From IMG/VR virus record IMGVR_UViG_3300045135_002615, positions 62,001 through 126,000 of that record: a stretch of DNA of 64,000 nt. One strand, 5' to 3'. The notes under the pieces are model-generated. The model did not search any database. It was not told the DNA's origin and saw only the letters and a list, made by a program, of their open reading frames with translations. This document shows positions 13,691 to 42,954 of the stretch, in pieces. Made by a program: the position numbers and the translations under genes. Within the stretch, counting starts at the first letter, position 1, and each line of letters opens with the position of its first letter.

Positions 13691-14524
13691 TCAGATGACC
13701 TTCACCTTGTAACCCTTACGCATGAGATACTTAACAACACGCTCCTTAAGAGCCTTCATGTGGGTTTTATGCTGGGTCAAGCTGTCTTTGTAGATGTTTC
13801 CGGTGACTGAGATCGTTTGCTTAGAAAGCATGACCCACAGTATAGATGGCGGATAACTAAACGCCTTGTTCGCCAATATGAACCCAAAATGATTATTTGC
13901 ATCTGAGAGCTCAAGCACACCTCCCTGTAGGGCTTTTTTTGCATGAAGATCATCAATAGCCTTATAAATAGCACCCTCTTGACCCAAGGAGGGCTGCCAA
14001 CGTGAGCTAGGGTCAAACCCGTTGCGTACCCTGACCATATAAGGGGAGGACAACTTTGAGACAGTCTTCTCATAAGGCGAAGGACCAAAGAAACCTGCGG
14101 TCTTTTTGACTGAAGAGACACGGAGGGCTTTCTTTAGGGTGAATGCCATGTCTTTGAAAGAGTTAAGGGACGCCTCTTTGGATACCTTAAACTCATATTT
14201 TTCCATGAGCCTTATAACTGCGACAGATAAGTTGCCTCGATTTAACCAAACTGCCCCATTTGTATATTCAATGCTATAGGGCAGTCCCTCGTTAACCGTT
14301 GATTGAGGAGCAACCTTAATAAGGTACCTTATTGCGTCCACTCCCCTTAGCCCCCTTTTATCAATGTCCTTATCTGGACTAGGGACGTAAATGACCTCAT
14401 ATACAGGTAGGTCACCAAGCGTGCTCTCAATATTCTCTTTTCTTCCAAAGATCGCCTCTTTCTCAAGCTCTGCGATACGAGTTTCAAGTTGGGCGATTTT
14501 CTGACTTGCTGTTAAGTGTCTCAT
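13691..14524 (-). CDS. Leader-bearing protein A (277 aa), possibly two tandem related domains
   Basis: Starts MRHLTASQKIAQLETRIAELEKEA; GAAGGAG SD; internal KEAS and KTAG. Confidence 0.8.
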   Translation of the reverse strand: MRHLTASQKIAQLETRIAELEKEAIFGRKENIESTLGDLPVYEVIYVPSPDKDIDKRGLRGVDAIRYLIKVAPQSTVNEGLPYSIEYTNGAVWLNRGNLSVAVIRLMEKYEFKVSKEASLNSFKDMAFTLKKALRVSSVKKTAGFFGPSPYEKTVSKLSSPYMVRVRNGFDPSSRWQPSLGQEGAIYKAIDDLHAKKALQGGVLELSDANNHFGFILANKAFSYPPSILWVMLSKQTISVTGNIYKDSLTQHKTHMKALKERVVKYLMRKGYKVKVI

Positions 14525-14583
14525 GTGTACTCCTTCTATGTCTGTACCATGTGTAAACAAGAAGATAAAAGGAGTACAACATT

Positions 14584-14958
14584 ATGGGTGCAGGTATCAT
14601 GGTGAGATGCGGAGGTGAGGTTCTAATTCTCAAGAGAGCAAACTACAAAGAGGACAAGTATGCGGGCTATTGGAACTTCCCCGGTGGCACAGCAGATGAA
14701 GGTGAGACCCCATATGAAACCGCAGTCAGGGAGACTAGGGAAGAGATCGGGGTCTCCACCCCATATATCAAGATCGTTGACCATATAGGAGATCGCATCT
14801 ACACGATGTTCATCGGGCACGTCCCTATTAAGTTCAAACCAATCATAGATCATGAGCACACTGATTGGAGGTGGATACCAATCTCAGAAGTTAGTCATAT
14901 CGAGAATTTCCACCCCAAGGATAAGAGGCTCTTTGAGAGACTTAACGTGAGTTTCTGA
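14584..14958 (+). CDS. NUDIX hydrolase
   Basis: Complete Nudix box GGTADEGETPYETAVRETREEIG. Confidence 0.95.
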   Translation: MGAGIMVRCGGEVLILKRANYKEDKYAGYWNFPGGTADEGETPYETAVRETREEIGVSTPYIKIVDHIGDRIYTMFIGHVPIKFKPIIDHEHTDWRWIPISEVSHIENFHPKDKRLFERLNVSF

Positions 14959-15439
14959 GCCTATGCTTAGCGATCTCTCTTGCGTTGTTGTCCATCTCAT
15001 GTGAGGTGGGTCCCCCCTCGGTTGTAAAGGGAAAAGATAATATCAGACCAACTACTGAACCGAGCTGACCTGAGCCAAGAAGGAGACCAATGCTACCTGT
15101 TACAGTGACGAGGATTGCAATAATGGCTATCACCGCTATGGTCGCATTACTTAGTTTAAAGGTTTGTCGTAGCGAGAAATAGAAGTGGTCCCAAAGTTTT
15201 TTAAATGATGATCTCTTGGGTGCCTCCTCTAGGATCTGCATGAACTTCTCATCTTTTCGGAGTTGCTTGATCTGCCTAGCTATATCCTCCTCCCTCGCTC
15301 CTTGAGCGACCTCCACCACCGACCGAGGTATCGAGCTCAGCACTTTAGGTAGCTCCTTCAGAAGGCTGAAAATCGCCTCTTTTTCCATTTGAGCAACCTT
15401 AGCATGGGCGACTCTTTGTATCATTGCTTGTCTATTCAT
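14942..15439 (-). CDS. Membrane protein with leader variant (MNRQAMIQRVAHAKVAQMEKEAIF), 165 aa
   Basis: GGAGG SD at the revised start; long hydrophobic segment IAVIAIIAILVTVTGSIGLLLG...VVGLILSF. Confidence 0.75.
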   Translation of the reverse strand: MNRQAMIQRVAHAKVAQMEKEAIFSLLKELPKVLSSIPRSVVEVAQGAREEDIARQIKQLRKDEKFMQILEEAPKRSSFKKLWDHFYFSLRQTFKLSNATIAVIAIIAILVTVTGSIGLLLGSGQLGSVVGLILSFPFTTEGGPTSHEMDNNAREIAKHRLRNSR

Positions 15440-15499
15440 CTTGCACCTCCATATAGGACATATACATGGCAAGAGACATATAAAAAAAAATCTACTAAA

Positions 15500-16582
15500 T
15501 TACCATGCTTGGAAGTGAAGCCCTATAGACCATGTGTTAGACCCATCTGACCCATACACCCAACCCACACCCGGAGCTACATTCAATGCCTTCCCTGCAA
15601 ACATCATATGATAAGTCCCCATCACCCCTAAGTAGGGAACGCCCACCGTCAAGATCACGTTAGCCCCTAGTCGATACTTGCCTTCAACCGCATTGACCAA
15701 TGAAGCACCTACACTCAAACCGAACCCTGTGCTCTGATAGGTTGAACCGATTAGTAAAGAAGGCTCAAAGAGCTTAAGACCCCTCCCCGTTTGACTAGGG
15801 TCTACCTTTGGAGTGTAAGTGAATGACCCTTGTAAGTTGGGGTCTCCCTCTAACAGGGTCTGCTCTGCAATCGAGACAAAGCCTTTTTCAGGGTCTACAT
15901 AGCCTGCATAGATGTGAACCCCTTGATTTTGAGCAGCTCCTGAGCCGAGCTTGTTAGGGTCTTCACTATATCCTATCGTGACGACCTTGAAGGCAAGGTT
16001 GAGGTCAAGAGCATACTGACCCTCCCATAGATTAGGGGTCGAAAAGCGAGCAAGGGGTGAGCCATTGACCTTGTAAGGGCTCTCCCAACTAAACTCAAAA
16101 GGCTCACAACGCTCAGGATGATCCGCACACCTGACTTGGTCTTGCTTAGATACACCTTTCCATGTGCTTGGAGGAGGGGGCGTCTTAGCTCTATCTACTT
16201 TGCCTCCGATGCGGCGGATGCCTTCATTAAGGCGAGTCTCCATGTGTGTGAAGCGTACACCAATACTGTCTATACGAGCATTTGTCTGATCAAGGAAGCG
16301 GTCAAGCTCTCTGCGTGTACTCTCATCAAGACCTTCCATAACTTCACGGGTACGATTGATCACCTCAGCTTGAGTGACCATGCGGCTCTCGACCTGGTTG
16401 AGTTGAGTATTGAGCTGAGAGATGACGCGGGCTTGCTCAGATAGCTTACCCTCAAGCTGCTCCTTGATCGTTTGGTTGAGGCTTTGAGACTTGTAGTTTG
16501 TCCACCATGTGGAGCCGAGGTTAAGGATGACTAGAGTGGCGAGGGCATAAAGACCTCGATTAAAAAGCATAGTGGGTTCCAT
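15500..16582 (-). CDS. Envelope protein: N-terminal TM, coiled coil, C-terminal amphipathic beta-strands
   Basis: Hydrophobic residues about 9-28; heptad-rich 30-125; alternating-pattern strands ending WSIGLHFQAW. Confidence 0.65.
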   Translation of the reverse strand: MEPTMLFNRGLYALATLVILNLGSTWWTNYKSQSLNQTIKEQLEGKLSEQARVISQLNTQLNQVESRMVTQAEVINRTREVMEGLDESTRRELDRFLDQTNARIDSIGVRFTHMETRLNEGIRRIGGKVDRAKTPPPPSTWKGVSKQDQVRCADHPERCEPFEFSWESPYKVNGSPLARFSTPNLWEGQYALDLNLAFKVVTIGYSEDPNKLGSGAAQNQGVHIYAGYVDPEKGFVSIAEQTLLEGDPNLQGSFTYTPKVDPSQTGRGLKLFEPSLLIGSTYQSTGFGLSVGASLVNAVEGKYRLGANVILTVGVPYLGVMGTYHMMFAGKALNVAPGVGWVYGSDGSNTWSIGLHFQAW

Positions 16583-16681
16583 GATTTATCTCCATCTTAG
16601 GGTTGGTCTACTGAGATTACCATAGCCTTGAAGGGTAGGCTTACTATAAAGTAGACAACTATCATTTAACGGAGCACAGAC

Positions 16682-19285
16682 ATGAACTTCTTAGACGCAT
16701 TGACACAAGTCAATCGACCCAACATCAGCCCTAAGCCTTGGATGGCAGAGTGCGAGCTTATTTTCGGAACAAGAGACAACCTCGACAAGTGCATTGACGA
16801 GTGTATCAACTCTCCTACAGGCTTCTATGGTCTTGACACCGAGACTACAGGTCTTGACACGCGAGTATTCAACGGAAAGACAAGAGACACCATCGTGGGC
16901 ATCTGTCTCGCCCCGACCAAAGACAAGGGCTACTACTTCCCTGTCGCCCATAAAGAGGGAGTAGAGCACAACATTCCATGGAGGATCATGGGTCCTGCCC
17001 TTGAGCGTCTGTTTGATGTGTCTGTTAAGGCTATCCCTATCTTCCACAACAGCTCTTTTGATATGGAGGTGTTGGAGTTCAACGGATTCACCAAGCAACG
17101 TCTAGGTGAGAAGCGTTGGGACTCTCAGGCAGGGTGGCACGACACCTATATCTTGCAGTATCTCCTCAACCCTCGTGAGAAGGGCGGGCGTGGTCTTAAG
17201 CACTTGACGAACGTCCACCTCAAGAGGGAGATGATCGAGCTCTATGAGTTGTTTGGCATGGATAAGAAGGGTAGTAACTTGAACTACTCTCAACTAGACC
17301 CCTCATGGGAGCCTTGTGTGTGGTACGCCGCGAGTGATGCCATGTGTACGCTTGGGCTCTTTGAGATCCTCTATGCCGAGTATACAAGTAAGCCTGAGCA
17401 TACCAACTTCATCTATGCGTTGGAGAAGTCCTGTGCTTCCGCTACGCGGTGGATGCACCGCAACAGGGTCTACATTGATAGGGACACCGCCCTGAGCTAT
17501 GCCCAATCGGGTCAGAAGCTGTGGTTTGACTCTCTCGTAGAGGTCTACGAGGGTGCGTCAGAGATCCTTGGGCGTAATATTATGCCCAACTATGTACGCA
17601 TCTTGAAGGGAGAGCTGAAGGGTATGAACCGCTTCAATCCCGATGAGGTCGAGGGTATGAGCTACAAGGTACGCCTCGATGAAGCTCGTAAAGAGGCATT
17701 ACGCTTACACCCTGACCCTACAGAGGTGCTCACTAAGTCTGTCCCATACATTGACCGAGATGCAGGTACGGAGAGTGTTGAGTTCCCCTTAGTCTATGAC
17801 ATCATGTCACCACAGCAGTTCGGTCTGCTTTTGAGAGAGTTGGGTGTACCTGGCTTGAAGGCATCTGAGAAGTCGGGTCAAGTGGTCACGTCTAAAGATG
17901 TGATTGAAGTCGTGATCAAAGAGGCGAGTGAGACTTTCCCCTTCATGAAGAAGGTTAAGACCTTCCGTGAGCTAGGTAAGGCTATGGGTCAATACCTCAT
18001 CCCCTTCGTGGAGGATGTGGGTCCCGATGGGACACTCAAGCCCAAGTTTGATCAGTTCGCTGCCGATACGGGTCGCTTCTCATGTAAGACAAACAGCAAG
18101 CCTTGGAAGGTGCTTGATGGTGGCTGTCGTGTACCCTTTCAAGGTATTCCTGCGACCTATGATCCTAACAAGCCCGAAGCTATCGCCAAGATGCGTAAGT
18201 GTGTAGCTGTTAGAAACCCTGACTATTGGCTCGCGGCGATTGACTACGCAGGTGTAGAGTTAAGGCTCGTCACCAACTTGAGCGGTGAACCTCTATGGGA
18301 AGATGCCTTCTTCCGTTGTTCGGAGTGTGGTAAGGATTACCCTAAAGACATTCAAGAGGATGGATTTGCGGAAGCCCCTCCTGCGATCTGCTCATGTGGG
18401 TCGGATAAGATCGGTGATCTCCACACGATCACGGCGGTAGCCTTTTATGGAGAGGGAGCTAAGAAGCAAGACGATTGGAAGAAGCTCCGTGGTAACGGCA
18501 AGTCCTGTAACTTTGCTCTCTCTTATGGAGGTACGGGCAAGGCGGTACAGAGGTCTATTAAGGGTTGCTCAGCAGAGGAGGGTGAGGAGAAGTACAAGCT
18601 CTTTACCAAGACGTACAAGACGTTGACTGCGTGGTGGGCTCAGCAACACGCTTTTGGGCGTAAGCATGGTTTTGTAAAGACGGGCTTAGGTAGGGTTCAG
18701 CCCCTCCCTGACATCAACAACAAGAAGGAGTTTGGTCTCCGTTCTAAAGATGAGCGTAAGGCAGTTAATGGACCTGTACAGGGTACGAGTGCCGACATTA
18801 CTAAGCTCGCCATGAGTCTGATCTACAAAGCGGTCAAGGAGCGTGGTTGGGAAAACAAGCTCATGATGATCTTGACGGTACACGATGAGATTGTGTTTGA
18901 GATTCACAAGGACATCTTGAAGGAGGGTATTGAGCTACTCTGTGAGTTGATGACCCGTAATGAGGCGGTCAAGCGTATGAAGTGGCCTGTACCTTTGCTC
19001 GTAGACGTAGAGCTAGGTAAGGATTGGACAGTCCCTTACGACCTCAAAGAGATCAGAGAGGGCGAGGGGGATCCTGAGCTAGTCAAAATCTTTGGTGGTG
19101 TAAAGCCTTCGGAGAAGCCTGTTGAGGAGGAAGCTCCTAAGCAGGAGAAGCCGAAGGTGGACACACTTGAGATTGACGAGTTGACTGCGGATAGTGCGGT
19201 CAAGGTGGCGATGTGGGTTAGGGAGAGAGAGGGAGAGTGGGACGTGATCTATAGTGGGAGATCAGTCAAGGCACTACTCGTTTAA
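16682..19285 (+). CDS. polA: DNA polymerase family A with 3'-5' exonuclease (Phe762 type)
   Basis: ExoI DTETTG, ExoII HNSSFD, ExoIII YAASDA; motif A DYAGVELR; motif B RGNGKSCNFALSYG; motif C TVHDEIVFE. Confidence 0.97.
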   Translation: MNFLDALTQVNRPNISPKPWMAECELIFGTRDNLDKCIDECINSPTGFYGLDTETTGLDTRVFNGKTRDTIVGICLAPTKDKGYYFPVAHKEGVEHNIPWRIMGPALERLFDVSVKAIPIFHNSSFDMEVLEFNGFTKQRLGEKRWDSQAGWHDTYILQYLLNPREKGGRGLKHLTNVHLKREMIELYELFGMDKKGSNLNYSQLDPSWEPCVWYAASDAMCTLGLFEILYAEYTSKPEHTNFIYALEKSCASATRWMHRNRVYIDRDTALSYAQSGQKLWFDSLVEVYEGASEILGRNIMPNYVRILKGELKGMNRFNPDEVEGMSYKVRLDEARKEALRLHPDPTEVLTKSVPYIDRDAGTESVEFPLVYDIMSPQQFGLLLRELGVPGLKASEKSGQVVTSKDVIEVVIKEASETFPFMKKVKTFRELGKAMGQYLIPFVEDVGPDGTLKPKFDQFAADTGRFSCKTNSKPWKVLDGGCRVPFQGIPATYDPNKPEAIAKMRKCVAVRNPDYWLAAIDYAGVELRLVTNLSGEPLWEDAFFRCSECGKDYPKDIQEDGFAEAPPAICSCGSDKIGDLHTITAVAFYGEGAKKQDDWKKLRGNGKSCNFALSYGGTGKAVQRSIKGCSAEEGEEKYKLFTKTYKTLTAWWAQQHAFGRKHGFVKTGLGRVQPLPDINNKKEFGLRSKDERKAVNGPVQGTSADITKLAMSLIYKAVKERGWENKLMMILTVHDEIVFEIHKDILKEGIELLCELMTRNEAVKRMKWPVPLLVDVELGKDWTVPYDLKEIREGEGDPELVKIFGGVKPSEKPVEEEAPKQEKPKVDTLEIDELTADSAVKVAMWVREREGEWDVIYSGRSVKALLV

Positions 19286-19662
19286 ATGAAAATCCCATCC
19301 AACCTCCTGACGTTGGTTTTGTTTTGGAGTTCACGTTTTAACTCACGAGCAACTCTCTTAGGATTTGAGGCATAAGTGAGTTGCAACCAATCAACCCTGA
19401 TTGAAAATGAAGGGTCATTCCTACCAATGACTTCAACTTGCATATCAGCTTCTCTCCCCTGACTGTCAGTCAGCTCATATTTGACGTAGTAACCTCCGTG
19501 GGAATAAGAGTTCTTAAGGTTTATCTGCTCAACCTTATAACCTTCGTCCTCAAACACCTTCTCAATATCCTTTAAATATCTTAGGGGGTGTGCTTTTTTC
19601 TCAAGACGAGCGATACGGGATTCGAGGTGGGCGATTTTCTGACTGGCTGTTAGGTGTCTCAT
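19282..19662 (-). CDS. Leader-bearing protein B (126 aa)
   Basis: Starts MRHLTASQKIAHLESRIARLEKKA; AAAGGAGG SD 6 nt upstream. Confidence 0.8.
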   Translation of the reverse strand: MRHLTASQKIAHLESRIARLEKKAHPLRYLKDIEKVFEDEGYKVEQINLKNSYSHGGYYVKYELTDSQGREADMQVEVIGRNDPSFSIRVDWLQLTYASNPKRVARELKRELQNKTNVRRLDGIFI

Positions 19663-19728
19663 GAACATCCTCCTTTAGATTGGTTATGACTTGGGTACGA
19701 TAAAAGAACTATCAAAGGAGTGGACAAC

Positions 19729-20259: not shown

Positions 20260-20260
20260 T

Positions 20261-20620
20261 ATGTCTTATAGGAGACCTGTCACACCTTCATCCGTCTTAC
20301 CGCCTGACTTAATACGGGGGTATTACAACCGAGACGAACAAGCTATGTTAGAGGTCAGGTCATGGGTAGACAGGAATGGACTGATACTTCTTTTCACCTT
20401 TGGTAAGGTTAGGGGTGATGAGAGAGTTATCGTTGATGAACAAGGGGGCATCTATGTCGAGTGGGAGGCTCTACCTAAGAAGAAGGACTTATGTAGATGG
20501 CTTGGTGACATCTCAGTAGATACCTTGAGAGAAGCACTCACTCAAGAGTGGACTCGCAAACAGATGTTTGACGAGATAATTAAGACACCAATTACTGCAC
20601 CCAATGGTATAAGGGGTTGA
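20261..20620 (+). CDS. Hypothetical protein
   Basis: GGAGGG SD before ATG at 20261, adjacent to the upstream stop. Confidence 0.65.
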   Translation: MSYRRPVTPSSVLPPDLIRGYYNRDEQAMLEVRSWVDRNGLILLFTFGKVRGDERVIVDEQGGIYVEWEALPKKKDLCRWLGDISVDTLREALTQEWTRKQMFDEIIKTPITAPNGIRG

Positions 20621-20661
20621 GGGACTTGATCCCACTAACCCATTCATTTAGGAGTAATGCC

Positions 20662-20853
20662 ATGAGCATTCAGACTCGTATCGCAGCACTTAAGGATGTC
20701 ATCGCCGCACTTGAGGCAGACGCAATCAAGACCGACAATGGTAACAAGTCAGCGGGCACTCGTGTCCGTAAGGCACTCCAAGAGGTTGTCAACACCTCTA
20801 AGGAGATCCGCAAGGAGGTTCTTGAGGCACGCAATGAGGAGAACGCTAACTAA
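20662..20853 (+). CDS. Histone H1-like nucleoid protein (Hc1 family), 63 aa
   Basis: Signature GNKSAGTRVRKALQ..KEIRKEV; AGGAG SD. Confidence 0.8.
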   Translation: MSIQTRIAALKDVIAALEADAIKTDNGNKSAGTRVRKALQEVVNTSKEIRKEVLEARNEENAN

Positions 20854-20883
20854 GAGTTAGCTCTTCTTCCTTAAGAAGCTGTT

Positions 20884-20953: not shown

Positions 20954-20966
20954 ATAGTTACTTTAT
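20954..20966 (+). promoter_or_regulatory. Late-promoter motif ATA-GTTAC-TTTAT
   Basis: 41 nt upstream of ATG 21007, just after a terminator. Confidence 0.65.
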
Positions 20967-21006
20967 ATCTCCACCTCAACCAACACAACCCATAAAGGAG
21001 ATGTCC

Positions 21007-21891
21007 ATGAGACACCTAACAGCTAGTCAGAAAATCGCTCAGCTTGAAAACCGTATCGCCCACCTAGAGAAGCAAGCCTTCCTAGAAGGCATCCAACAAA
21101 AAGTCTCAGCTTGGATTGAAGCCAAGCTACCCTATAAGAGAGAAGTGAAGAAGGCAGTTCTTTCTGAGTACTCTATCAGGGACATGAAGAGTGCTGAAAA
21201 AGCAGCTAAATATGTGGTGAGGGATCTTAAAGATCCTCATCACATGACCGCCCTCAGCATGATTGTGAAGTCCGAGTCTACGTTCAAGGGTCGAGTGGAG
21301 ATGGCTCTCAATATTAAGAATCACCCTGAGATGTTTGAGGGGCGTACAGCGTCAGCGTTTGCTGTTGCCGCGTTGAGCGTAACAGCGTTACTTGTGGGTG
21401 TTGTTTGGACCTCGATTAAGCAGGTGTTCCGCCTTGCGTCACACAATAAGCAAGGCGGAATTCCCGTGATCGTGGGTGTCATCATCTCCATTTTGGGAGG
21501 TGTCGCTTTTCATGAGCTTCTTCTGACTCCTGAGAAAAAAACAAAAGAGATTGGGCACGCCATCTCAAGGGGTTTGATCGGTGAGCTCCCCGGAATTAAA
21601 TCAATAGAGAAGGTCTCAGAGAACATGGATGAGGTGGTCATAAAACTTGAGATTGCAGACACAGCAATGAAATACCCTACCGACATAGCTACTTTTTATC
21701 TCACCTTTGATACAACAAAGGATTATGTTTTCGTTGAAAACAGCTACATCAACGGGATAGCAGGGACATATGAAAATGTTTTAAAGAAGCTAGAGTCTCC
21801 AAGAGTTGAGGCTGAGTTGAGAGAAAAAATTAAGATTTGGGAAGATGACGATATTTTTCTTGGGCGAGATGACGATGACATGTCCATATAG
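21007..21891 (+). CDS. Leader-bearing membrane protein C (294 aa, two hydrophobic segments)
   Basis: Starts MRHLTASQKIAQLENRIAHLEKQA; hydrophobic stretches follow RTAS and KQGG. Confidence 0.8.
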   Translation: MRHLTASQKIAQLENRIAHLEKQAFLEGIQQKVSAWIEAKLPYKREVKKAVLSEYSIRDMKSAEKAAKYVVRDLKDPHHMTALSMIVKSESTFKGRVEMALNIKNHPEMFEGRTASAFAVAALSVTALLVGVVWTSIKQVFRLASHNKQGGIPVIVGVIISILGGVAFHELLLTPEKKTKEIGHAISRGLIGELPGIKSIEKVSENMDEVVIKLEIADTAMKYPTDIATFYLTFDTTKDYVFVENSYINGIAGTYENVLKKLESPRVEAELREKIKIWEDDDIFLGRDDDDMSI

Positions 21892-21900
21892 TATGAGAAC

Positions 21901-31428: not shown

Positions 31429-31621
31429 TGGGGTCTACCTTCCTGTTGGCTTGTTGCTCTTTGAGCTGTGTCTGAACTCTCTCAAGGGCATGTATCTGAG
31501 ACTGAACTTGACGAGCTTCCTTCTCATAGTAGTCCTTGAGAGCAATCAAGTTGCTCACAAAGTCCCCTAGCTGAGTACCCTCAAGGTTTGGTCTCTCTGA
31601 CTCACTCTTCCAATCACTCAT
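31421..31621 (-). CDS. Small coiled-coil protein
   Basis: Overlaps neighbours at both ends; heptad pattern. Confidence 0.6.
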   Translation of the reverse strand: MSDWKSESERPNLEGTQLGDFVSNLIALKDYYEKEARQVQSQIHALERVQTQLKEQQANRKVDPNG

Positions 31622-37600: not shown

Positions 37601-40347
37601 CTCTCACCACCTAATGAACTCGTCACAAAGTAGCTCACATACACATTAGAACCCGTCACATCACTCGTGAACGTGACCTCCTCGTTGGTGAAGCTATACC
37701 CACTAGCTAATGAAGCCCCCACATATACGGCGAGGTCTCCAATAACTTCACGACCCTCACCATTGTAAGACCACTTGTACCCATTGATGGACTCCGCTGG
37801 CTCATCCACAATCGAGAACAACAACGTCTCCGTAACACGCTCATCAGATCCCAACGGAAAATAACTCGCCTCTACCCCAACACCACTCCTTAAAGGCTCC
37901 CTAAACCTTATCACCCCTCGGCTCGCCTCATACCTGATGTCACTAACCTCCTCTACAAGCTCATCATAAACACCCGTTAGAGAAGCCCCGTTGATGTCAC
38001 ACTCCGCATGATCTAACCCCGCTAAGGGAAGACGCCTCAAGAGAACTACACCTACCCAACTAGAGTCCTCTATCCCATCTAACTTAAATACCACATACCC
38101 ATCTACCACCTCGAAACTCTGACCACCTTGAGCTACTCCCTCTGTGTACTCCATATCATCTATCAAAAGCACATATGAACCACCCAACACATGTGCGTCA
38201 CCACCCACATAGTACGGGGCTTCAATACGCTCATCCTTCAACACCACTAATGGAACTAATGAACCCCCTGAAACCCTCACACTCAACGTGTCTAAACTAG
38301 ACACCAAACCTAAGTCTAAATCCCCGTCTATACCATAGACCTTGTAGACCTTCAATGCGTCTCCCGCACTCACCTTCTCAAATACCTCCCCTACTAAACG
38401 GGTCATGTCAGGTGTCTCCTCCGCTACATAACCCTCTCGATAACCCCTATACGCTTCCCAACTAGAACCCGACTCTAGTGTACCCCCCGACACCACAACA
38501 CTCAACCCCAATACAGACTCGATACGCACATACGACTCTCCATCCGTCAACCAATCCCCTGAACGTAGCCCTTCTACCTCTACATCTAACTCTACAGACC
38601 TCTCCCCCGTCACCACAAAAACCTCCCCTCCACCTAACCTCTCTCCATATACACTCTGTAGACTCAACACTCCACCAACGCCCACCTCATAGTCCCGACC
38701 CTCCACCAAAGTCTGAGACCCCGCTCCCTCTACATACACACTCAAGGTACTCGTACCCGATAACACACCCGGTGAACTACTCAAGAGACTCGTAGCCTCC
38801 TTCACGTCACCCTCTAACGTACCCGAACCTATCCACTCAAAACCATTCGGCACCTCTCCAAACCTGTAGCTAACCTCAACCCCCTCTACAAGATCCCTGT
38901 CCCCAACCTTGAAGTGCTTACCATACCCATATACACCCACCATGTCTAAACGAGGCTCAAAGTTCAATACCTGATATGTCGAGACACCACTCACCTGACC
39001 CACAGCCTCATCGTCAAATGAATAGTAACCCACCACCGAAGGACTCGTTAAGTCCAACCTTAAACCCAACTCCGTGTGCGGCACTAAACCCAACTCTCCT
39101 AACACAACCCTCTCCCCTATCGTAGGATAACTCACCTCCGCTCCCACTACCAAATGACCCCTCGTGTCTATATACGCATCTCCTCCAACCACTACCCCAT
39201 CTAACAACTCCACCATCGACCCATTGACCAACCTAAATGAACCACTCACTTGACCCACTGGTAACAACGAAACCAATGGATTCATATACACACAACCCAC
39301 TGAACTACCCACCGCACCCACTTCCAATGACTCCTCATAGTCCCCCTCCCCATTAACTAACCAACCCGTGCGGTCACTTAACGCCCACACTAAACCACTA
39401 CCATTCGGTCTCTCCCCCGTTGCCTCCCCAATAGGCTCAATACCACTACCATCAGGTACTGAGATACGCTCCACTAACCCTACACTATCCTCCCCCAACA
39501 CAAGACCCTCATACTCATAAATAACACCCTCCTCCCCAAGCAACTCACCCGTCAATAAATCTACTTGTACCTCTCCCCTACGCACAGCTCCAAACGAACC
39601 CTCTACATACACTACATCTACATAGCCCTTACCCTTCTCTCTCAAGAGAAGATACTCATGACGTAAAGGCACTGGGCTTAACCTATCCCCACTCACCACA
39701 CTCTCAACCCCTAAGAGCTCATCACTCACATAGATGGCACTACCCGATAACCCCTTTAAAATGCCCCCCTCCACATAAGCCACTACTCCCGAACTCTCTT
39801 CTAATGGTACATCCTCACTCCCTATCAAGTACACCCCATCTAACGTGTGTAACTCCCCACTCGTACCCACCTCGTCCCCATTAGATACCTCCACTCCCTT
39901 ACCACCACCCTTCAAAACCCAACGACCTCCCTTGTACTCGAACCTTGTACGCACCGCGTCATTCTGAGTCCACCAAAAACCCATACGCCCTATCGTAGCC
40001 ACCGCACTACTCAAGCCCGCTTGATCACTCTCAATCACCGTACCCCCATACAAAATACGCAACGCTCCCGTTACACTCTCTACTACACCATCCCTTAAAC
40101 CCGTAGCATAGTAATAGAGACCTCCCACCTCCTCTATGTACGTCAACGTGATCTCCCTCTCCCCACTCCATACTGAACCATCACCCTTAGCTATCCATAA
40201 GACATCTCCAAGAGATCCTATCTCATACGCTACTCGACCCCTCACCTCTCCACCACCCACCACTCGGTTGTCTATACGCCTTAACGCAAGACCTGTCTCC
40301 TTGTCGTTCTTCTCCCCACTACGGACATCAAGTAATACTTTGCTCAT
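31618..40347 (-). CDS. Giant acidic beta-rich virion protein (2909 aa), probable baseplate/tail-appendage component
   Basis: 8.7-kb uninterrupted ORF rich in D/E/G/V/S/T; start moved to 40347 (GGAG SD; late motif at 40393-40405). Confidence 0.75.
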   Translation of the reverse strand: MSKVLLDVRSGEKNDKETGLALRRIDNRVVGGGEVRGRVAYEIGSLGDVLWIAKGDGSVWSGEREITLTYIEEVGGLYYYATGLRDGVVESVTGALRILYGGTVIESDQAGLSSAVATIGRMGFWWTQNDAVRTRFEYKGGRWVLKGGGKGVEVSNGDEVGTSGELHTLDGVYLIGSEDVPLEESSGVVAYVEGGILKGLSGSAIYVSDELLGVESVVSGDRLSPVPLRHEYLLLREKGKGYVDVVYVEGSFGAVRRGEVQVDLLTGELLGEEGVIYEYEGLVLGEDSVGLVERISVPDGSGIEPIGEATGERPNGSGLVWALSDRTGWLVNGEGDYEESLEVGAVGSSVGCVYMNPLVSLLPVGQVSGSFRLVNGSMVELLDGVVVGGDAYIDTRGHLVVGAEVSYPTIGERVVLGELGLVPHTELGLRLDLTSPSVVGYYSFDDEAVGQVSGVSTYQVLNFEPRLDMVGVYGYGKHFKVGDRDLVEGVEVSYRFGEVPNGFEWIGSGTLEGDVKEATSLLSSSPGVLSGTSTLSVYVEGAGSQTLVEGRDYEVGVGGVLSLQSVYGERLGGGEVFVVTGERSVELDVEVEGLRSGDWLTDGESYVRIESVLGLSVVVSGGTLESGSSWEAYRGYREGYVAEETPDMTRLVGEVFEKVSAGDALKVYKVYGIDGDLDLGLVSSLDTLSVRVSGGSLVPLVVLKDERIEAPYYVGGDAHVLGGSYVLLIDDMEYTEGVAQGGQSFEVVDGYVVFKLDGIEDSSWVGVVLLRRLPLAGLDHAECDINGASLTGVYDELVEEVSDIRYEASRGVIRFREPLRSGVGVEASYFPLGSDERVTETLLFSIVDEPAESINGYKWSYNGEGREVIGDLAVYVGASLASGYSFTNEEVTFTSDVTGSNVYVSYFVTSSLGGESVLRLSSGVEVPKFSLSSGVSTMTCPVDVRDRVSVGDLISIGFSKFFVTSVTASEVGLSPTPLSSLEAESFDVLNVPVVVYDGYELRSSFRQVEGVRVESVARGTELRLSGDLSPLMGSGSLVITDGVCYRVSTVRVEEGVTILVAEGQVRAHSYTSSGTRLLVSLRASYFEGDKVLSLSTSVVGIDYKLLRYRGGVATLLIEGRDYELREGEVELVDGVVGGDQYYFLHTARGVLSPIQVAGGRVSYPRYSVSYTERRVPTDYTGLPVTAGCVVESPDTFQVTIMDKGVYGSIVASRLKAESLRSRTTSGKSVATEQTFKGVGLGLYDLLADDFVARDRIREYDGYLRPLDSVLSTATGSLVGDYDGQFKFELPIAGDWGGAGFEDPLTMEVYPRYVVLAARALEQGYMLPSDPMSVNDVRELTALMEDQGSLVENEIDDYLMVGWDRSRVFDFTTGVPVSPYVARWARASEPSIYSRLFNERTEYYTYRVPGDLDSTTNGSVIALVGNDAQGRITDITSLTLARRPARFRIVNYSRDGFADFEPLSAGKPTFILSAVELQSFPIDSTTGYPDVSQFITYGGDTPDVLTGDPSHVFGGLSVGDKLKISVDGVFHDLLNKAELAVYDGASAYKTARVGAIYQGCLVVLNGVPSSYSINGDDLYTYVPKRGDTLALSYRADLDESDAQPSTFRIGVDVGLNTATGELYDISLPSLSEPSWPLQELTGQNVPEAYAPLQGIVTFNNTNTSPFEYPALKGLDVCDAGDHDLPYLNTLGEREVLEGIQPNFEAGSAQTLNLYSGELEYEYPDEVRDDLTQITGGHLVTSEDFSNLNGFIEQTPRQGDLILLRPDDSGVDGSGATGIMELMSIDGAQLSPPFFETPSDGASYEVLNAQVHMLPSGLGSGVTFQETLIFNVATSEWDQSLVEFEFSNGFPVGDIMDKVFNTNGTFILHVYAPTTYEFHYKITFRYDGASWIVSTTSPTGVVEVATNILTVSYSATSIGVLQQPIPNVLTLAEEPQWPFNGYETWITNTLWTDLIDLDVTADIGVNTRTLSIDFFLNYRIDMRFGLNTNSYVLSDRLSFYDADADFTTWIQSDTDPSVLLAAGGGVAPLDVTPLFYVYGSLMNVWQYGGIGTQLIESYANAFSRFGYSHIRLGEAWDVIDANTLRVRSLFDIERTNDPMSLFVGAEVRDGEVIFIGSGEYGRIDPTGTTDSAPAELTNLVSFEGSLANVEEGDLVYIERGHNAGVHRVKRITPSALSATYTEQIGSSDILPVVFPTVVEVLDNGDGTGTLVTDSSDLSLYYNGSGLMEAIILLNDNYLTQPASTQNNSFDEVFYRSYIRLKYDSINGGSMTFTFSSANGTENPTYGNVDSNQVEELTYQQMNSVIGSGGQVVCGIHKVPFNFLATGLLPYEVPTSLASPLTIDLTLAGGLSVSVTVDESYIERDEEGIMRALLLPSNLVGGSWESIFPTIEDTPQGNTYGQGFLTPNDSFTLTITAEAAIHLDRAFPRLMRDYRGTTPKVFNDGTSQVRSLADEVGLGNLPAWTFTEVSTIKVRRLRRFSRIMLEMLNSLLGLKNLYEQKVGLVDHLSFTDGVYTLTSKKVDVFGVEALGGKDTQVGDFDEALKVGDYITMYDSSSDEVFKMKIVEATPGSAKGISLSGDPNGDMVSFKVTTRTHLIPQEQSFNEFLEHGFDLIYSSTARVPTENTLEDTSVDFSELITGTPSDYYLVIDPQGALEGAPLERGAPAQGDGPLGVGQPNTLDDNRGSYRVISVDGSSLTVEFISGSSNPHEIFLPSVDGDTSNPLRVTSPIDNGTYTTSSDSIEPFSYRILKRRDLLDRNLAEVVLFFRERVLSWSERVRLFNQLVPLPLTWAAYEQTDSIYLVGENDPTHPSNDLIFGVLTPHEPPYPYTDTMLSLTDRRLLVEDPQLEAQGHTLFEGMVTLIGNGISSMGMRSKRYAWINTRTNRVTGTLPRMDRIDYQNPDLTALEDII

Positions 40348-40392
40348 ATCTCTAGCTCCACTCAGATGGTCAGACCATAGACTACCACCCAC

Positions 40393-40405
40393 ATAGATAA
40401 AATAT
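40393..40405 (-). promoter_or_regulatory. Late-promoter motif ATA-TTTTA-TCTAT
   Basis: 46 nt upstream of ATG 40347. Confidence 0.55.
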
Positions 40406-40406
40406 C

Positions 40407-40979: not shown

Positions 40980-41213
40980 ATGCTCTCACCTAACCCCATA
41001 GATGGTTCGTAAATAAAGTCTACCAAGTGCCCCCCCCCTACCCTCACTGACACTTAAATAGTTGTTGACACACCCACACACGAAGATGTGGTGGTATGTC
41101 GGTGTCTACAGGGTGACATACGCTTCGAGTATAAAAAGACTATTGAGAGTTAAACCGACACGAAAAATGAGAGCGTTGAGTTGAGTTGGGTTCTAAGGGT
41201 AGGTATTGGGTCA

Positions 41214-41226
41214 GTAGGTTATTTAT
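41214..41226 (+). promoter_or_regulatory. Late-promoter motif GTA-GGTTA-TTTAT
   Basis: 45 nt upstream of ATG 41271. Confidence 0.6.
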
Positions 41227-41270
41227 ATGCGTATGGTGTGTAGCCCCTTAGAACTATTGAGGAGAGAGAG

Positions 41271-41687
41271 ATGGCTAAACACGCAGAGAGAGAGATGGGC
41301 TTATTGCCTATCATGAATCCGCTATACAACTTGAGAGAGATCTCGAAGCAGATGGCGTTATTGGAGGATCACTTGAATCACCCTCGCAAGAGGTGTCCTG
41401 ATTGTATTAGGAAGCACTTCTTGACGATAGAGGCATTATTTGAGGAGGCGGTATCCTTGGACAAGGAGGGTAAGTATGTGGAGTTGCTTGATGGCAAGGC
41501 ACAGGAGATGAGAGATTTACAGGGGGCGTGGCTTGACGGCAGGGATGGTAGGGATGCGGACAAGGTATATATGGTAATAGCTCAGGGTATCCGTGCGATG
41601 CGTAAGGAGTTTGCCCCTATGTGTTTTGATGTGCGTAAGTTGGCTTCGTTGAGGGTAGCGAGCAGGTATCTTCTTAGGCGGAGGTGA
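41271..41687 (+). CDS. Helical CxxC protein (NLREISKQ..LLEDHL...RCPDCIRKHF)
   Basis: GAGGAG SD; late motif at 41214-41226; basic tail RKLASLRVASRY. Confidence 0.75.
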   Translation: MAKHAEREMGLLPIMNPLYNLREISKQMALLEDHLNHPRKRCPDCIRKHFLTIEALFEEAVSLDKEGKYVELLDGKAQEMRDLQGAWLDGRDGRDADKVYMVIAQGIRAMRKEFAPMCFDVRKLASLRVASRYLLRRR

Positions 41688-41697
41688 GTGGGGTTTC

Positions 41698-42954
41698 TTA
41701 GTATCTTCTTCTTAGGCGAGAATCCTGACGGCTGAACCCTTTAGGGAGGGTAGCACCTGTGAGATCAGCTCCACTGAGGTCTGCTCCACTGAGGCCAGCG
41801 TGACTGAGGCCAGCGTGACTGAGGTCTGCTCCACTGATTTTAGCGTATTCAAGGTCAGCGTGACTGAGGTTAGCATCATTGAGTTTAGCCCCATTGAGTT
41901 CAGCACCATTGAGTTTAGCCCCATTGAGTTCAGCCCCATCGAGTTTAGCCCCTTTGAGGTTAGCTTCACTGAGGTTAGCTTCAATGAGCTGAGCATCATA
42001 GAGTTTAGCTTTAGTGAGGTTAGCACCATTGAGATAAGCTCCTGTGAGATCAGCATAACTGAGGTCAGCCCCACTGAGGTCAGCTCCTGCGAGTTTAGCT
42101 TTAGTGAGGTTAGACCCCATGAGGTAAGCCTTAGTGAGCTTAGCCTTAGTGAGGTTCGCCCCTGTGAGTTTAAACCTAACGAGGTTAGTTCCACTGAGGT
42201 CAGCGTGACTGAGGTTCGCCCCATTGAGTTCAGCCTCATAGAGTTTAGCCCCTGTGAGTTTAGCCCCTGTGAGATCAGCATCTGTGAGATCAGCCCCCTC
42301 AAGGTTGGCTCCACTGAGGTCAGCCTTACTGAGATCTGCATCTGTGAGGTCAGCCTTTCTGAGATCAGCACCCTTGAGGTTAGCGTTATTGAGCTCAGCA
42401 TCTGTGAGATCAGCTTCAGTGAGGTTAGCCCCACTGAGATCAGCCTTACTGAGCTTAGCTCCTATTAGGTCAGCCCCTCTGAGATCAGCATCTGTGAGAT
42501 CAGCCTTACTGAGATCAGCGTTATTGAGATAAGCATCTGTGAGATCAGCCCCTCTGAGATCAGCACCCTTGAGGTTAGCGTTATTGAGCTCAGCGACAGT
42601 GAGATCTGCATCAGTGAGATCTGCATCAGTGAGGTCAGCCTTTGTGAGGTTAGCCCCTCTGAGGTTAGCCCCTCTGAGCTTAGCCCCAATGAGCTTAGCC
42701 CCAATGAGATCAGCCTTACTGAGCTCAGCCTCACTGAGATCAGTCCAACTGAGATCAACACCACTGAGATCAGTCCAACTGAGGTCAAGACCACTGAGGT
42801 CTTGACCTGAGAAGTCTTTCTCCCCCTTAGCGAGTGCCTCCACTAGGGACTCCCTAGTGTGCTTAAGATTGCCCTTTAGGGAGGCTTGCTTCTCTAGATG
42901 AGAGATACGGTTTTCGATTTGAGCGATTTTTTGACTGGTTGTTAAGTGTCTCAT
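41698..42954 (-). CDS. Pentapeptide-repeat protein carrying the conserved leader (protein D)
   Basis: About 70 A(D/N/K/E)Lxx repeats after MRHLTTSQKIAQIENRISHLEKQA. Confidence 0.95.
   Translation of the reverse strand: MRHLTTSQKIAQIENRISHLEKQASLKGNLKHTRESLVEALAKGEKDFSGQDLSGLDLSWTDLSGVDLSWTDLSEAELSKADLIGAKLIGAKLRGANLRGANLTKADLTDADLTDADLTVAELNNANLKGADLRGADLTDAYLNNADLSKADLTDADLRGADLIGAKLSKADLSGANLTEADLTDAELNNANLKGADLRKADLTDADLSKADLSGANLEGADLTDADLTGAKLTGAKLYEAELNGANLSHADLSGTNLVRFKLTGANLTKAKLTKAYLMGSNLTKAKLAGADLSGADLSYADLTGAYLNGANLTKAKLYDAQLIEANLSEANLKGAKLDGAELNGAKLNGAELNGAKLNDANLSHADLEYAKISGADLSHAGLSHAGLSGADLSGADLTGATLPKGFSRQDSRLRRRY

What the first reader, a model, noticed from the sequence alone, without database searches (positions are those of the whole stretch)
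13691..42954. A shared 24-aa N-terminal address tag on four unrelated proteins: candidate virion cargo-targeting leader
Seen: MRHLT(A/T)SQKIA(Q/H)(L/I)E(T/S/N)RI(A/S)xLEK(E/K/Q)A opens four genes dispersed over 29 kb on both strands: 14453-14524(-), 19591-19662(-), 21007-21078(+) and 42883-42954(-). After residue 24 the proteins are unrelated (alpha/beta domains, a two-TM protein, a pentapeptide repeat). Many DNA differences are at third codon positions and the SD regions differ, which points to selection on the peptide rather than a copied translation cassette. The leader has a/d heptads (I10, L13, I17, L20) and contains R-h-x-x-h-E, the established trimer-specifying motif of short coiled coils. 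All four genes have the late motif or a close variant 35-41 nt upstream. Established: T4 internal proteins share an N-terminal capsid-targeting sequence removed by the gp21 prohead protease. Inference: this is an analogous, apparently undescribed tag that docks diverse cargo on the prohead scaffold for packaging and injection.
Basis: partly seen in the sequence, partly recalled or inferred. Interest (0 to 1): 0.92.

Follow-up and report, generated by a model that had tools for sequence, protein, structure and literature searches.

The report
Shared address tag on huge-phage proteins
A 24-residue helical peptide opens seven otherwise unrelated proteins of this ~300-kb uncultured phage and over a thousand protein families in its relatives; it most likely steers them into the assembling capsid, which would flag a large hidden set of proteins delivered together with the phage DNA.

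Summary
Four window genes start with MRHLT[AT]SQKIAxLExRIAxLEKxA and are unrelated afterwards. The window is part of a 296,642-bp IMG/VR contig that carries three more copies, two of them 1.6-2.2 kb downstream of a phage-G-type major capsid gene. Selection acts on the peptide: pN/pS is 0.19, and Ser7 and Arg16 switch between codon families.

The leader is clade-wide. Relatives use a variant, MRR[ST]ASE[IV][IL]xxLExR[IV]ARLE[KR]x[AS], on at least 8-21 genes per contig. A leader profile finds 1,190 protein clusters among 1.84 billion, nearly all at residue 1 and almost all ORFans. Sister lineages carry an unrelated leader, LRSKLIRLAHxxPxLRPHLLPLLKEA, with 11 copies in LR745208.1.

Both leaders end in [KR]-x-A-[SAG]. 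That motif is 7-8-fold enriched in the prohead protease and scaffold orthologues. It also sits at the end of the capsid protein's N-terminal extension.

Best reading (about 0.5): a prohead-targeting leader, removed by the head protease, that works like the T4 capsid-targeting sequence but shares no sequence with it. Nothing shows encapsidation directly. The "late motif" does not discriminate gene classes. Cargo functions remain unknown. I rate it a new variant of a known kind, with high interest.

The parts
14453..14524 (-). Leader (24 codons) of gene 13691-14524
   Evidence: 54.4 bits. AF2 models residues 6-26 as a helix followed by a low-confidence linker, residues 21-51.
13691..14452 (-). 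Cargo of the 277-aa protein (alpha/beta, function unknown)
   Evidence: No Pfam or PHROG hit. One 57%-identical homologue carries the same leader on the syntenic contig L223. No fold match.
19591..19662 (-). Leader of gene 19282-19662
   Evidence: 56.7 bits. AF2 models a helix at 6-23 with a hinge at 23-25.
19282..19590 (-). Cargo of the 126-aa protein (small alpha/beta domain, function unknown)
   Evidence: The only homologue is P0002, 63% identical, with the same leader. No fold match.
21007..21078 (+). Leader of gene 21007-21891
   Evidence: 60.1 bits.
21079..21891 (+). Cargo: protein with two predicted TM segments
   Evidence: Homologues L216/L211 carry the variant MRRRASE leader instead.
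42883..42954 (-). Leader of gene 41698-42954
   Evidence: 54.9 bits.
41698..42882 (-). Cargo: pentapeptide-repeat protein
   Evidence: Pfam PF00805, 2.1e-114.
20963..20989 (+). TTTATA promoter-like hexamer plus CA-rich 5'UTR element upstream of 21007
   Evidence: Similar to the 5'UTR of the decoration-capsid operon.
42972..42997 (-). TTTATC hexamer plus the same 5'UTR element upstream of 42954
19699..19704 (-). TTTATC hexamer upstream of 19662
14564..14569 (-). TTTATC hexamer upstream of 14524
14942..15442 (-). Possible degenerate member: TM protein whose N-terminus ends in ..KVAQMEKEAIF
   Evidence: 4.6 bits only; weak.
54386..55810 (+). Membrane protein with the leader core LEARIASLE at residues 23-31
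56969..57646 (+). Membrane protein starting directly with the leader core MEHRIASLE
   Evidence: (10.4 bits).

Best explanation
The leader is a prohead (capsid-interior) targeting peptide of a clade of huge phages with phage-G-type capsids. It forms a short amphipathic helix of about 2.5 heptads, with the trimer-type R-h-x-x-h-E motif. This helix docks the attached protein onto a fast-evolving component of the assembly core, most likely the acidic scaffold, while the shell closes. The prohead protease then cuts at the [KR]-x-A-[SAG] site that ends the leader. The diverse small cargo proteins stay inside the head and are delivered to the host with the DNA, as candidate host-takeover or anti-defence factors. 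New cargo genes gain the tag by recombination with an existing promoter-UTR-leader cassette. What is shown: the tag, selection on the peptide, its clade-wide spread and cargo diversity, its linkage to head genes, and the motif statistics. What is inferred: docking, cleavage, packaging and injection.
For: (1) N-terminal position: 301 of 309 HMM hits start at a Met, and nearly all of 1,190 library hits match at residues 1-25.
(2) Peptide-level selection: pN/pS is 0.19-0.27 with pS ~0.59. Ser7 is AGT in this genome but TCA/TCG in relatives, and Arg16 is CGY or AGR.
(3) Sharp module boundary: conservation collapses after LE[KR]x[AS]. AF2 gives a helix followed by a low-confidence hinge or linker.
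(4) Head linkage. The same genome encodes a capsid protein (2.4e-57 to PDB 6wkk 'Gp27 major capsid protein'), a head maturation protease (phrog_18299, 5.8e-15) and a 555-aa acidic scaffold-like protein. Two leader genes lie 1.6-2.2 kb downstream of the capsid gene. Relatives carry 1-4 leader genes in that position. In LR745208.1 a gene tagged with the other leader sits between the scaffold and decoration genes.
(5) Cleavage-site argument. [KR]xA[SAG] occurs at the leader end in 33% of R/H-type leaders, against 0-1% in control windows, and is kept when its register shifts. It occurs in 18 of 23 leaders of the unrelated LRSKLIRLA family, against 0-1 in controls. K.AS is 8x (protease) and 7x (scaffold) above composition-preserving shuffles, while the decoration protein has none where about 1.4 are expected, and 4 [KR]xA[SAG] where about 19 are expected. 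The sites sit at conserved alignment positions, including one just before the invariant scaffold C-terminus. KLAA ends the capsid protein's 30-aa N-terminal extension, and this is conserved out to Tunturi_5.
(6) Leader type follows the genome lineage, not the cargo: two cargo families occur with either leader. This is expected if all tags in one genome serve one receptor.
(7) Precedent: T4 internal proteins share only an N-terminal leader that directs packaging, and it is removed by the prohead protease (PMC5694885, PMC12373910).
Against: There is no proteomic, structural or expression evidence of any kind.
Most leader genes are dispersed among replication and other genes rather than in the head module.
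At 8-21 per contig, up to roughly a tenth of the genes would encode head-internal proteins, which is a lot.
About 6% of cargos have TM segments, and these would tend to insert into the host membrane.
Only a third of R/H leaders match [KR]xA[SAG] strictly, and just 2 of the 7 in this genome match K.AS.
The motif counts come from related sequences, so they are not independent.
The scaffold's leader-like segment (QRLARLERLAS) is not significant against the leader HMM (<=2.8 bits), so no receptor has been identified.
The TTTAT[AC] promoter-like motif does not separate late genes from other genes.
Five proteins carry the motif internally or at the C-terminus.
Confidence: 0.5

Rival explanations
1. 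The leader is a docking or oligomerisation helix for a hub that is not the capsid. It forms homo- or hetero-trimeric coiled coils that gather many small phage proteins on a shared intracellular scaffold. One candidate is a membrane-anchored platform built by the TM proteins that carry full or truncated leader cores. Another is a phage-made compartment.
For: The R-h-x-x-h-E heptad pattern is conserved. Three further membrane proteins in the window, plus the 2-TM cargo, carry leader or leader-core N-termini. An 84-aa protein ends in a leader-like helix, and five proteins have internal copies, so a free N-terminus is not strictly needed. Genes are dispersed over the genome and number 8-21 per contig.
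Against: Oligomerisation alone does not explain three things: the invariant non-coil start M-R-R-[ST]-A-S-E, the sharp boundary with a [KR]xA[SAG] motif shared with protease and scaffold, or the recurrent position beside the capsid gene. No compartment genes were seen, but only ~91 kb of the genome was read.
Confidence: 0.22
2. The leader is an anchor that displays diverse domains on the outside of the virion, as capsid decoration or head fibres. This would resemble the shared N-terminal anchors of multiple tailspikes, or the capsid-binding domains of decoration proteins.
For: Leader genes neighbour the decoration and capsid genes. A trimer-type motif would fit three-fold capsid sites. The pentapeptide cargo hits PHROGs annotated as tail fibre.
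Against: Most cargos are tiny ORFans of 90-170 aa, and some have TM segments. The leader ends in a motif shared with proteins that proteases normally process. The clade already has a conserved decoration protein without the leader. The capsid protein is 91-98% conserved while leaders are replaced between lineages, which argues against direct binding to the shell surface.
Confidence: 0.1
3. The leader is a regulatory tag. It could be a degron or an adaptor-binding site that times the destruction of a class of proteins, or a nascent-peptide or 5'-coding element that controls their translation.
For: A common N-terminus on many unrelated, apparently accessory proteins. Codon 2 (AGA) is invariant in 19 of 19 distinct copies. 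Three copies share the 5'UTR.
Against: Synonymous sites inside the leader are close to saturated, and six-fold codon families are swapped, so an RNA element is unlikely. A degron needs neither a heptad coiled-coil pattern nor head-gene linkage. No phage Clp-type protease was seen in the parts read (not exhaustive).
Confidence: 0.1
4. There is no peptide function. The repeat is a recently copied DNA cassette (promoter, RBS and first codons) that spreads by recombination.
For: Three of the seven copies share ~50 nt of upstream sequence.
Against: pN/pS is 0.19 with pS 0.59 among paralogues. The peptide is conserved across relatives whose DNA has diverged, and it is present in 1,190 protein clusters.
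Confidence: 0.03

Closest known systems
T4 capsid-targeting sequence (CTS) on internal proteins IPI-III, Alt and related T-even Ip proteins
   Same: A short N-terminal leader is the only similarity among otherwise unrelated, non-essential small proteins. There are several copies per genome, and cargo varies between relatives. The leader is proposed to dock on the scaffold core and to be cut off by the prohead protease. The cargo would be co-injected (PMC5694885, PMC12373910).
   Different: There is no sequence similarity: tblastn of both leader types against 50,697 phage records finds no T4-like phage. The leader is longer (23-24 aa, against 10-20 for the T4 CTS per PMC5694885) and has a heptad/trimer motif. 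The candidate cleavage motif is [KR]xA[SAG], not L/I-x-E. The capsid and protease lineages differ (phage-G type). The repertoire is far larger: 8-21 per genome and at least 1,190 clusters. The function is untested.
Long N-terminal propeptides of phiKZ / 201phi2-1 / SPN3US head and ejection proteins
   Same: Giant phages with many head-internal proteins. Paralogues share conserved N-termini that are thought to target the prohead and are removed by the protease. One SPN3US ejection protein has a TM domain (PMC5694885).
   Different: Those propeptides are mostly over 100 residues, are shared only by paralogues, and are cut at [SAG]-x-E-type sites. Here a 24-aa module sits on more than 100 unrelated families.
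Encapsulin cargo-loading peptides and bacterial microcompartment encapsulation peptides
   Same: A short terminal peptide, followed by a flexible linker, targets diverse cargo into a protein shell. For encapsulins the shell has the HK97 fold. For microcompartments the peptide is an N-terminal amphipathic helix.
   Different: The shell gene here is a genuine phage capsid protein in a portal-less-than-certain but protease/scaffold/decoration head operon of a 297-kb myovirus-like genome. The peptide has no similarity to those signals, based on my knowledge of their consensus; this was not tested.
Polymorphic toxin/effector architectures (e.g. phage MuF-domain fusions)
   Same: A conserved N-terminal trafficking part with hypervariable C-terminal parts. 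Those of MuF type are thought to be carried in phage heads.
   Different: In those systems the N-terminal part is a large folded domain and the C-termini are recognisable toxin domains with adjacent immunity genes. Here the tag is 24 aa, and 98% of cargos have no Pfam domain.
R-h-x-x-h-E trimerisation motif of short coiled coils
   Same: R-[IV]-A-x-L-E with flanking a/d hydrophobics is invariant in the leader.
   Different: This is a motif, not a family. The oligomeric state here is unknown, and the leader has only about 2.5 heptads.

Membership tests
T4-type capsid-targeting sequence (functional class) | The same short leader sits at the extreme N-terminus of several otherwise unrelated proteins of one phage | tested here: met
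   Seven copies in one contig. Cargos are unrelated by BLAST. 301 of 309 hits are N-terminal.
T4-type capsid-targeting sequence (functional class) | Sequence homology to the T4 CTS | tested here: not met
   tblastn of both leader consensus peptides against the phage collection returns no T4-like phage.
T4-type capsid-targeting sequence (functional class) | The leader ends at a prohead-protease site of the T4 type, (L/I)-x-E | tested here: not met
   No conserved [LI]xE at the boundary. A different motif, [KR]xA[SAG], occupies it. The protease hits phrog_18299 and has no Pfam match.
T4-type capsid-targeting sequence (functional class) | The leader ends at a site shared with the phage's own protease substrates | tested here: inconclusive
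   K.AS is 7-8x enriched in protease and scaffold orthologues, and the capsid protein's N-extension ends in KLAA. The cleavage sites themselves are unknown.
T4-type capsid-targeting sequence (functional class) | Tagged proteins are found in proheads or virions, and the tag is sufficient to package a reporter | not testable with these tools
   The phage is uncultured and no proteome is available.
T4-type capsid-targeting sequence (functional class) | Late co-expression with head genes | tested here: inconclusive
   TTTAT[AC] and a CA-rich UTR are shared with the decoration-capsid operon. The hexamer also precedes many other genes.
Encapsulin cargo-loading system | The shell protein is an encapsulin (no portal, tail or packaging context), with cargo encoded adjacent to it | tested here: not met
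   The 292-aa HK97-fold protein matches the phage G capsid protein and phrog_2522 major head protein. It lies beside protease, scaffold and decoration genes in a genome that also has baseplate genes.
Polymorphic toxin systems | Recognisable toxin domains at the C-terminus, with downstream immunity genes | tested here: not met
   Pfam on 108 + 150 representatives finds only pentapeptide, Cupin_8/JmjC, WGR, RyR and DUF2958. Immunity genes were not examined.
Trimeric short coiled coil (R-h-x-x-h-E) | The motif is present in heptad register | tested here: met
   R, [IV], A, x, L, E are invariant or near-invariant, with a/d positions at -3, 0, 4, 7 and 11.
Trimeric short coiled coil (R-h-x-x-h-E) | Actual trimer formation | not testable with these tools
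   Only single-chain prediction was available.

The most novel reading that the evidence does not exclude
Each lineage of this abundant aquatic huge-phage clade runs its own leader/receptor 'postal code'. At least three leader types exist, two of them unrelated in sequence. Each code loads about 5-10% of the encoded proteins, over a thousand ORFan families in total, into the capsid for co-injection. That would be by far the largest virion-delivered effector repertoire known, and it could be predicted from sequence alone. An equally novel alternative is that the code addresses a non-capsid, phage-built assembly or compartment.
Probability: 0.3. Interest if true: 0.9.

Novelty: new variant of a known kind. 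Interest (0 to 1): 0.78.

Why it matters
If the leader is a packaging signal, a 24-residue profile identifies, from metagenomes alone, hundreds to thousands of proteins that huge phages carry into cells. Those proteins would be prime candidates for first-minute anti-defence and host-takeover functions, in a clade that has no cultured member carrying the tag.

It would extend the T4 capsid-targeting principle to a distant capsid lineage (phage-G type). It would show that leaders can be swapped wholesale between lineages while the shell protein stays over 90% identical, which points to the scaffold rather than the shell as the sorting receptor. It also predicts a protease specificity, [KR]-x-A|[SAG].

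On the practical side, it offers a compact tag for loading foreign proteins into large capsids.

If the signal proves not to be a packaging signal, a sorting signal on ~10% of a phage proteome would still be an unexplained organising principle.

Tried and rejected
(1) I briefly took the 262-aa HK97-fold gene beside the leader genes for an encapsulin. I rejected this: it matches the phage G capsid protein and sits in a head operon.
(2) Scaffold as a homologous partner of the leader: the QRLARLERLAS segment looked promising, but it scores <=2.8 bits against the leader HMM, no better than other head proteins. I keep it only as a weak lead.
(3) 'Late promoter' classification: TTTAT[AC] lies upstream of many gene classes, and the composite pattern is not enriched. 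The sigma-70 scan was uninformative.
(4) Function of the cargos: Pfam and PHROGs on 8 + 108 + 150 proteins gave nothing. Two AlphaFold models (mean pLDDT 65-66) with Foldseek against the PDB gave no hit below E=0.1.
(5) Homologue searches for two cargos found only one or two relatives each.
(6) I looked for shared cargo between the LRSKLIRLA leader family and the R/H family and found none at E<1e-3.
(7) Literature: the motif strings appear in no paper, and no description of this tag turned up in the phage G or giant-phage papers I read.
(8) Phage G and Tunturi_5 head regions (40 kb each) show no shared-leader genes.
(9) Tat signal, lipoprotein signal and membrane-targeting helix were considered and dropped: there is no hydrophobic h-region, and the pattern is heptad rather than surface-amphipathic (sequence inspection only).


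Full report
**1. The observation**

The window contains four ORFs, at 13691-14524(-), 19282-19662(-), 21007-21891(+) and 41698-42954(-). Each starts with MRHLT[AT]SQKIA[QH][LI]E[TSN]RI[AS]xLEK[EKQ]A at exactly the reported coordinates. The copies differ from each other at 0-4 of 24 residues. A profile of the leader scores them 54-60 bits, and the next best window segment scores 10 bits.

Beyond residue 24 the four products share no BLAST similarity.
- One is a pentapeptide-repeat protein (Pfam 2e-114).
- One has two predicted TM segments.
- The other two are small alpha/beta proteins with no family or fold match.

**2. Genomic setting**

The window is 100% identical to part of IMGVR_UViG_3300045135_002615, a 296,642-bp contig, at contig positions 62001-126000.

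Its closest deposited relative is the 485-kb uncultured phage LR745208.1. The DNA polymerase is 48% identical and the capsid protein 88% identical.

The window carries baseplate J and sheath-initiator genes, so the phage is myovirus-like.

A degenerate DNA pattern for the leader finds three further copies in the same contig and none in any other IMG/VR contig. One is at contig position 5004. The other two are at about 220.3 kb and 220.9 kb.

**3. Peptide or DNA?**

I compared 19 distinct leader DNAs. Over the seven paralogues of this genome pS is 0.59 and pN is 0.11, giving pN/pS 0.19. Over all copies the ratio is 0.27.

Ser7 is AGT in this genome but TCA/TCG in relatives. Arg16 is CGY or AGR. 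Leu4 is CTA or TTA. These switches between codon families require selection on the amino acid.

Three copies (21007, 42954 and L005:5004) also share about 50 nt of upstream sequence, including CTYAACCAACWCAAC, which occurs nowhere else in the window. This suggests the tag spreads as a promoter-UTR-leader cassette and is then maintained at the peptide level.

**4. The leader is clade-wide**

*Relatives with the same leader.* A metagenome scan found 15 estuarine or salt-marsh contigs that are not identical to the window. They carry MR[HQ]LTASQKIAxLExR[IV]AxLE[KR]xA on further unrelated proteins, including tandem paralogues. A syntenic 10-kb relative, L223, carries orthologues of two window cargos, both with the leader.

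*The variant leader.* The capsid gene of the contig (see section 5) was used to fetch 80 related head regions. The capsid protein is 91-98% identical in more than 593 IMG/VR contigs. In those regions the leader HMM finds a variant, MRR[ST]ASE[IV][IL]xxLExR[IV]A[RH]LE[KR]x[AS], at the N-terminus of genes just downstream of the capsid gene.

*Counts over all fetched DNA.*
- There are 309 hits, of which 301 begin at a Met.
- These give 142 complete distinct proteins, with median length 151 aa and range 20-433 aa.
- Their cargos fall into 108 BLAST-unrelated groups.
- Lower bounds per contig are 8, 13, 15 and 21 tagged genes on contigs of 227, 376, 206 and 173 kb. They are dispersed but often lie in runs of 2-4.

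*Search of the protein library.* A 30-column profile searched against 1.84 billion representative proteins returns 1,190 proteins at E<=1e-3, 88 of them at E<=1e-10. Nearly all match at residues 1-25. The best 150 fall into 116 unrelated groups.

*Cargo annotation.* Pfam recognises almost nothing in 258 representatives: pentapeptide, Cupin_8/JmjC, WGR, RyR and DUF2958.

*Absence from deposited phages and the literature.* Neither leader consensus occurs in 50,697 deposited phage genomes, and neither motif string occurs in the searchable literature.

**5. Anatomy of the leader**

I aligned 135 leaders on the core motif. The invariant or near-invariant positions are M, R, [ST]-A-S-[EQ], [IV], [IL], L-E, R-[IV]-A-R-L-E and then [KR]-x-[AST]. 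Conservation then collapses within one or two residues.

The hydrophobic positions fall at -3, 0, 4, 7 and 11, which is an a/d heptad pattern. R-[IV]-A-x-L-E fits the R-h-x-x-h-E trimer motif; the motif itself is established knowledge, and its fit here is read from the sequence.

AlphaFold models of two window proteins place residues 6-23/26 in a helix, followed by a low-confidence hinge or a 25-residue linker (mean pLDDT 65-66, so only this coarse feature is used).

Five distinct proteins carry the motif internally or at the C-terminus. One is an 84-aa gene with its own promoter-like site and terminators immediately after the capsid gene of this genome. Some proteins carry two leaders in tandem.

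**6. The link to head assembly**

*The head module.* In this genome (L021) the gene order is as follows.

| Position in L021 | Product | Evidence |
|---|---|---|
| 2972-5461 | 829-aa protein | no family hit in Pfam or PHROGs |
| 5483-6025 | 180-aa protein | no family hit in Pfam or PHROGs |
| 6027-7469 | head maturation protease | phrog_18299, 5.8e-15, |
| 7484-9151 | very acidic 555-aa scaffold-like protein | C-terminal ~45 residues invariant across the clade, |
| 9303-9890 | decoration-like protein | 44-81% identical orthologues at this position in 78 related loci, including 52% in LR745208.1; phage G annotates gp26 'capsid decoration' immediately upstream of its capsid gene; no family hit |
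| 9911-10789 | capsid protein | 2.4e-57 to PDB 6wkk 'Gp27 major capsid protein'; phrog_2522; |
| after 10789 | strong terminator, the 84-aa gene, then two leader genes | |

*Position of leader genes in relatives.* The first 7 kb after the capsid gene holds one to four leader genes in 10 of the 20 related loci that carry the full 10 kb on both sides of the capsid gene. The genome-wide average is about one per 8-28 kb.

*The 5'UTR.* The decoration-capsid operon is preceded by CCTTTTATAG and a CA-rich 5'UTR that resembles those of the leader genes. The TTTAT[AC] hexamer also precedes genes of all classes, so I do not treat it as evidence of late expression.

**7. A second, unrelated leader, and a shared ending**

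In sister lineages a different N-terminus, M..LRSKLIRLAHxxPxLRPHLLPLLKEA, heads 23 distinct unrelated proteins of 90-351 aa. These lineages have capsid proteins 88-94% identical to this one and include L073, L074 and LR745208.1.

LR745208.1 has 11 copies. One lies between the scaffold and decoration genes, and another lies 5.5 kb after the capsid gene. In L074 a copy sits 1.6 kb after the capsid gene, the position where many R/H-type genomes have theirs.

The leader type follows the lineage rather than the cargo. Two cargo families occur with either the H- or the R-type leader.

The shell protein is nearly invariant while the leaders are replaced. Any common receptor is therefore more likely a fast-evolving assembly protein than the shell. 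The scaffold is about 35-50% identical and the protease 40-75% identical between relatives. This is an inference.

Both leader families end in [KR]-x-A-[SAG].
- Among LRSKLIRLA leaders, 18 of 23 have it, against 0-1 in downstream control windows. It persists when its register shifts.
- Among R/H leaders, 33% have it, against 0-1% in controls, again in two registers.

The same motif is concentrated in exactly the proteins that prohead proteases normally cut.
- K.AS occurs 75 times in 37 protease orthologues (shuffle mean 9.4, maximum 18).
- It occurs 139 times in 46 scaffold orthologues (shuffle mean 19.3, maximum 32).
- It occurs 0 times in 53 decoration proteins, and there [KR]xA[SAG] is five-fold depleted.
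- The sites sit at conserved alignment positions amid divergent sequence. One lies just before the invariant scaffold C-terminus.
- The capsid protein's 30-residue N-terminal extension ends in GR.KLAAS, conserved out to the cultured Tunturiibacter phage Tunturi_5.

The orthologues are related, so these counts are not independent events, and no cleavage site has been mapped. I treat [KR]-x-A|[SAG] as a prediction.

**8. Interpretation**

The best-supported model is a prohead-targeting leader removed by the head protease. Functionally it parallels the T4 capsid-targeting sequence. [quoted passage not shown] That leader associates with the scaffold core and is cut by gp21 (PMC5694885).

It is not a member of that family by sequence or by cleavage motif. 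The scale is also very different.

The main weaknesses are these.
- There is no direct evidence.
- The tagged genes are many and dispersed.
- A minority of cargos have TM segments.
- Only part of the leaders match the motif.
- No receptor has been identified; the scaffold's QRLARLERLAS segment is not significant.

The rival readings are a non-capsid docking hub built on coiled coils, an external display anchor, a degron or regulatory tag, and a functionless DNA cassette. I weight them at 0.22, 0.10, 0.10 and 0.03. The last is contradicted.

**9. Verdict**

The finding is a new variant of a known kind (an N-terminal capsid-targeting leader), found in an uncultured, environmentally widespread clade, and it comes with a testable prediction of protease specificity.

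The organisms are phages of environmental bacteria, and the proposed experiments use laboratory strains.

Noticed in passing
window 20617-20853 (+): A 78-aa Hc1 histone-H1-like protein (Pfam PF07432, 3.2e-18) is encoded by the phage. It is conserved next to a leader gene in the syntenic contig L223.
   Followed up: partly
window 54386-55810 (+), 56969-57646 (+), 14942-15442 (-): Three membrane proteins have N-termini that carry truncated or degenerate copies of the leader core (LEARIASLE; MEHRIASLE at residue 1; ..KVAQMEKEAIF). They could be decayed members or partners of the tag.
   Followed up: partly
L021:11077-11331 (same genome, contig ~218.96 kb): An 84-aa gene lies directly after the capsid-gene terminator and has its own promoter-like site and terminator. 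The protein ends in an R-type leader-like helix (..TSQIVRNLERRVARLEKSSR, then stop), so the motif is at the C-terminus with no cargo after it.
   Followed up: partly
L073, L074, L101 (LR745208.1), L225-L242: A second, sequence-unrelated N-terminal leader, M..LRSKLIRLAHxxPxLRPHLLPLLKEA, heads 23 distinct unrelated proteins in sister lineages. LR745208.1 has 11 copies. 18 of the 23 end in [KR]xA[SAG].
   Followed up: yes
L021-L100 (capsid-gene neighbourhoods): The capsid protein is 91-98% identical across more than 593 IMG/VR contigs. The adjacent protease (40-75%), scaffold (~35-50%) and decoration protein (44-81%) diverge far more. Only the last ~45 residues of the scaffold are invariant.
   Followed up: partly
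L021:6027-9151 and orthologues: K-x-A-S is 7-8-fold over-represented in the C-terminal half of the prohead protease and in the scaffold. [KR]xA[SAG] is five-fold depleted in the decoration protein. This makes it a candidate protease recognition motif.
   Followed up: yes
L021:16451-18367: An N6/N4 DNA methylase gene appears to be interrupted by an intein (Hint_2 plus LAGLIDADG_3 domains). Two further partial methylase ORFs with near-identical N-termini lie just upstream (14334-15588).
   Followed up: no
window 24479-25879 (+): A 466-aa fusion of an AAT (acyl-CoA:6-aminopenicillanic-acid acyltransferase-like, Ntn hydrolase) domain with a ChaC/GGACT gamma-glutamyl cyclotransferase domain.
   Followed up: no
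window 31618-40392 (-) and 897-6191 (-): ORFs of 2,924 aa and 1,764 aa have no Pfam hit. The latter lies next to the baseplate J (6191-9475) and sheath-initiator (9472-10509) genes, so it is probably a tail or baseplate giant protein.
   Followed up: no
L005:4082-4885 (same genome): A leaderless pentapeptide-repeat paralogue lies directly upstream of the leader gene L005:5004. Three tandem ~320-aa membrane-protein paralogues (L005:1078-3981) lie beside it.
   Followed up: no
window 43808-45536 (-): Three tandem ~190-aa paralogues share the N-terminus MDFNKN.. and an internal NPDGYD block. These are ordinary tandem duplication, not a leader.
   Followed up: no
window 15500-16582 (-): A 360-aa protein with an N-terminal TM segment and coiled coil weakly matches Rz-like spanin PHROGs (6e-5). 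Its C-terminal half looks like a beta-barrel or porin.
   Followed up: no
P0007, P0028 (library proteins): Some tagged proteins carry two leaders in tandem, the first ending in ..LERKAS and the second starting at KRTASE without a Met.
   Followed up: no
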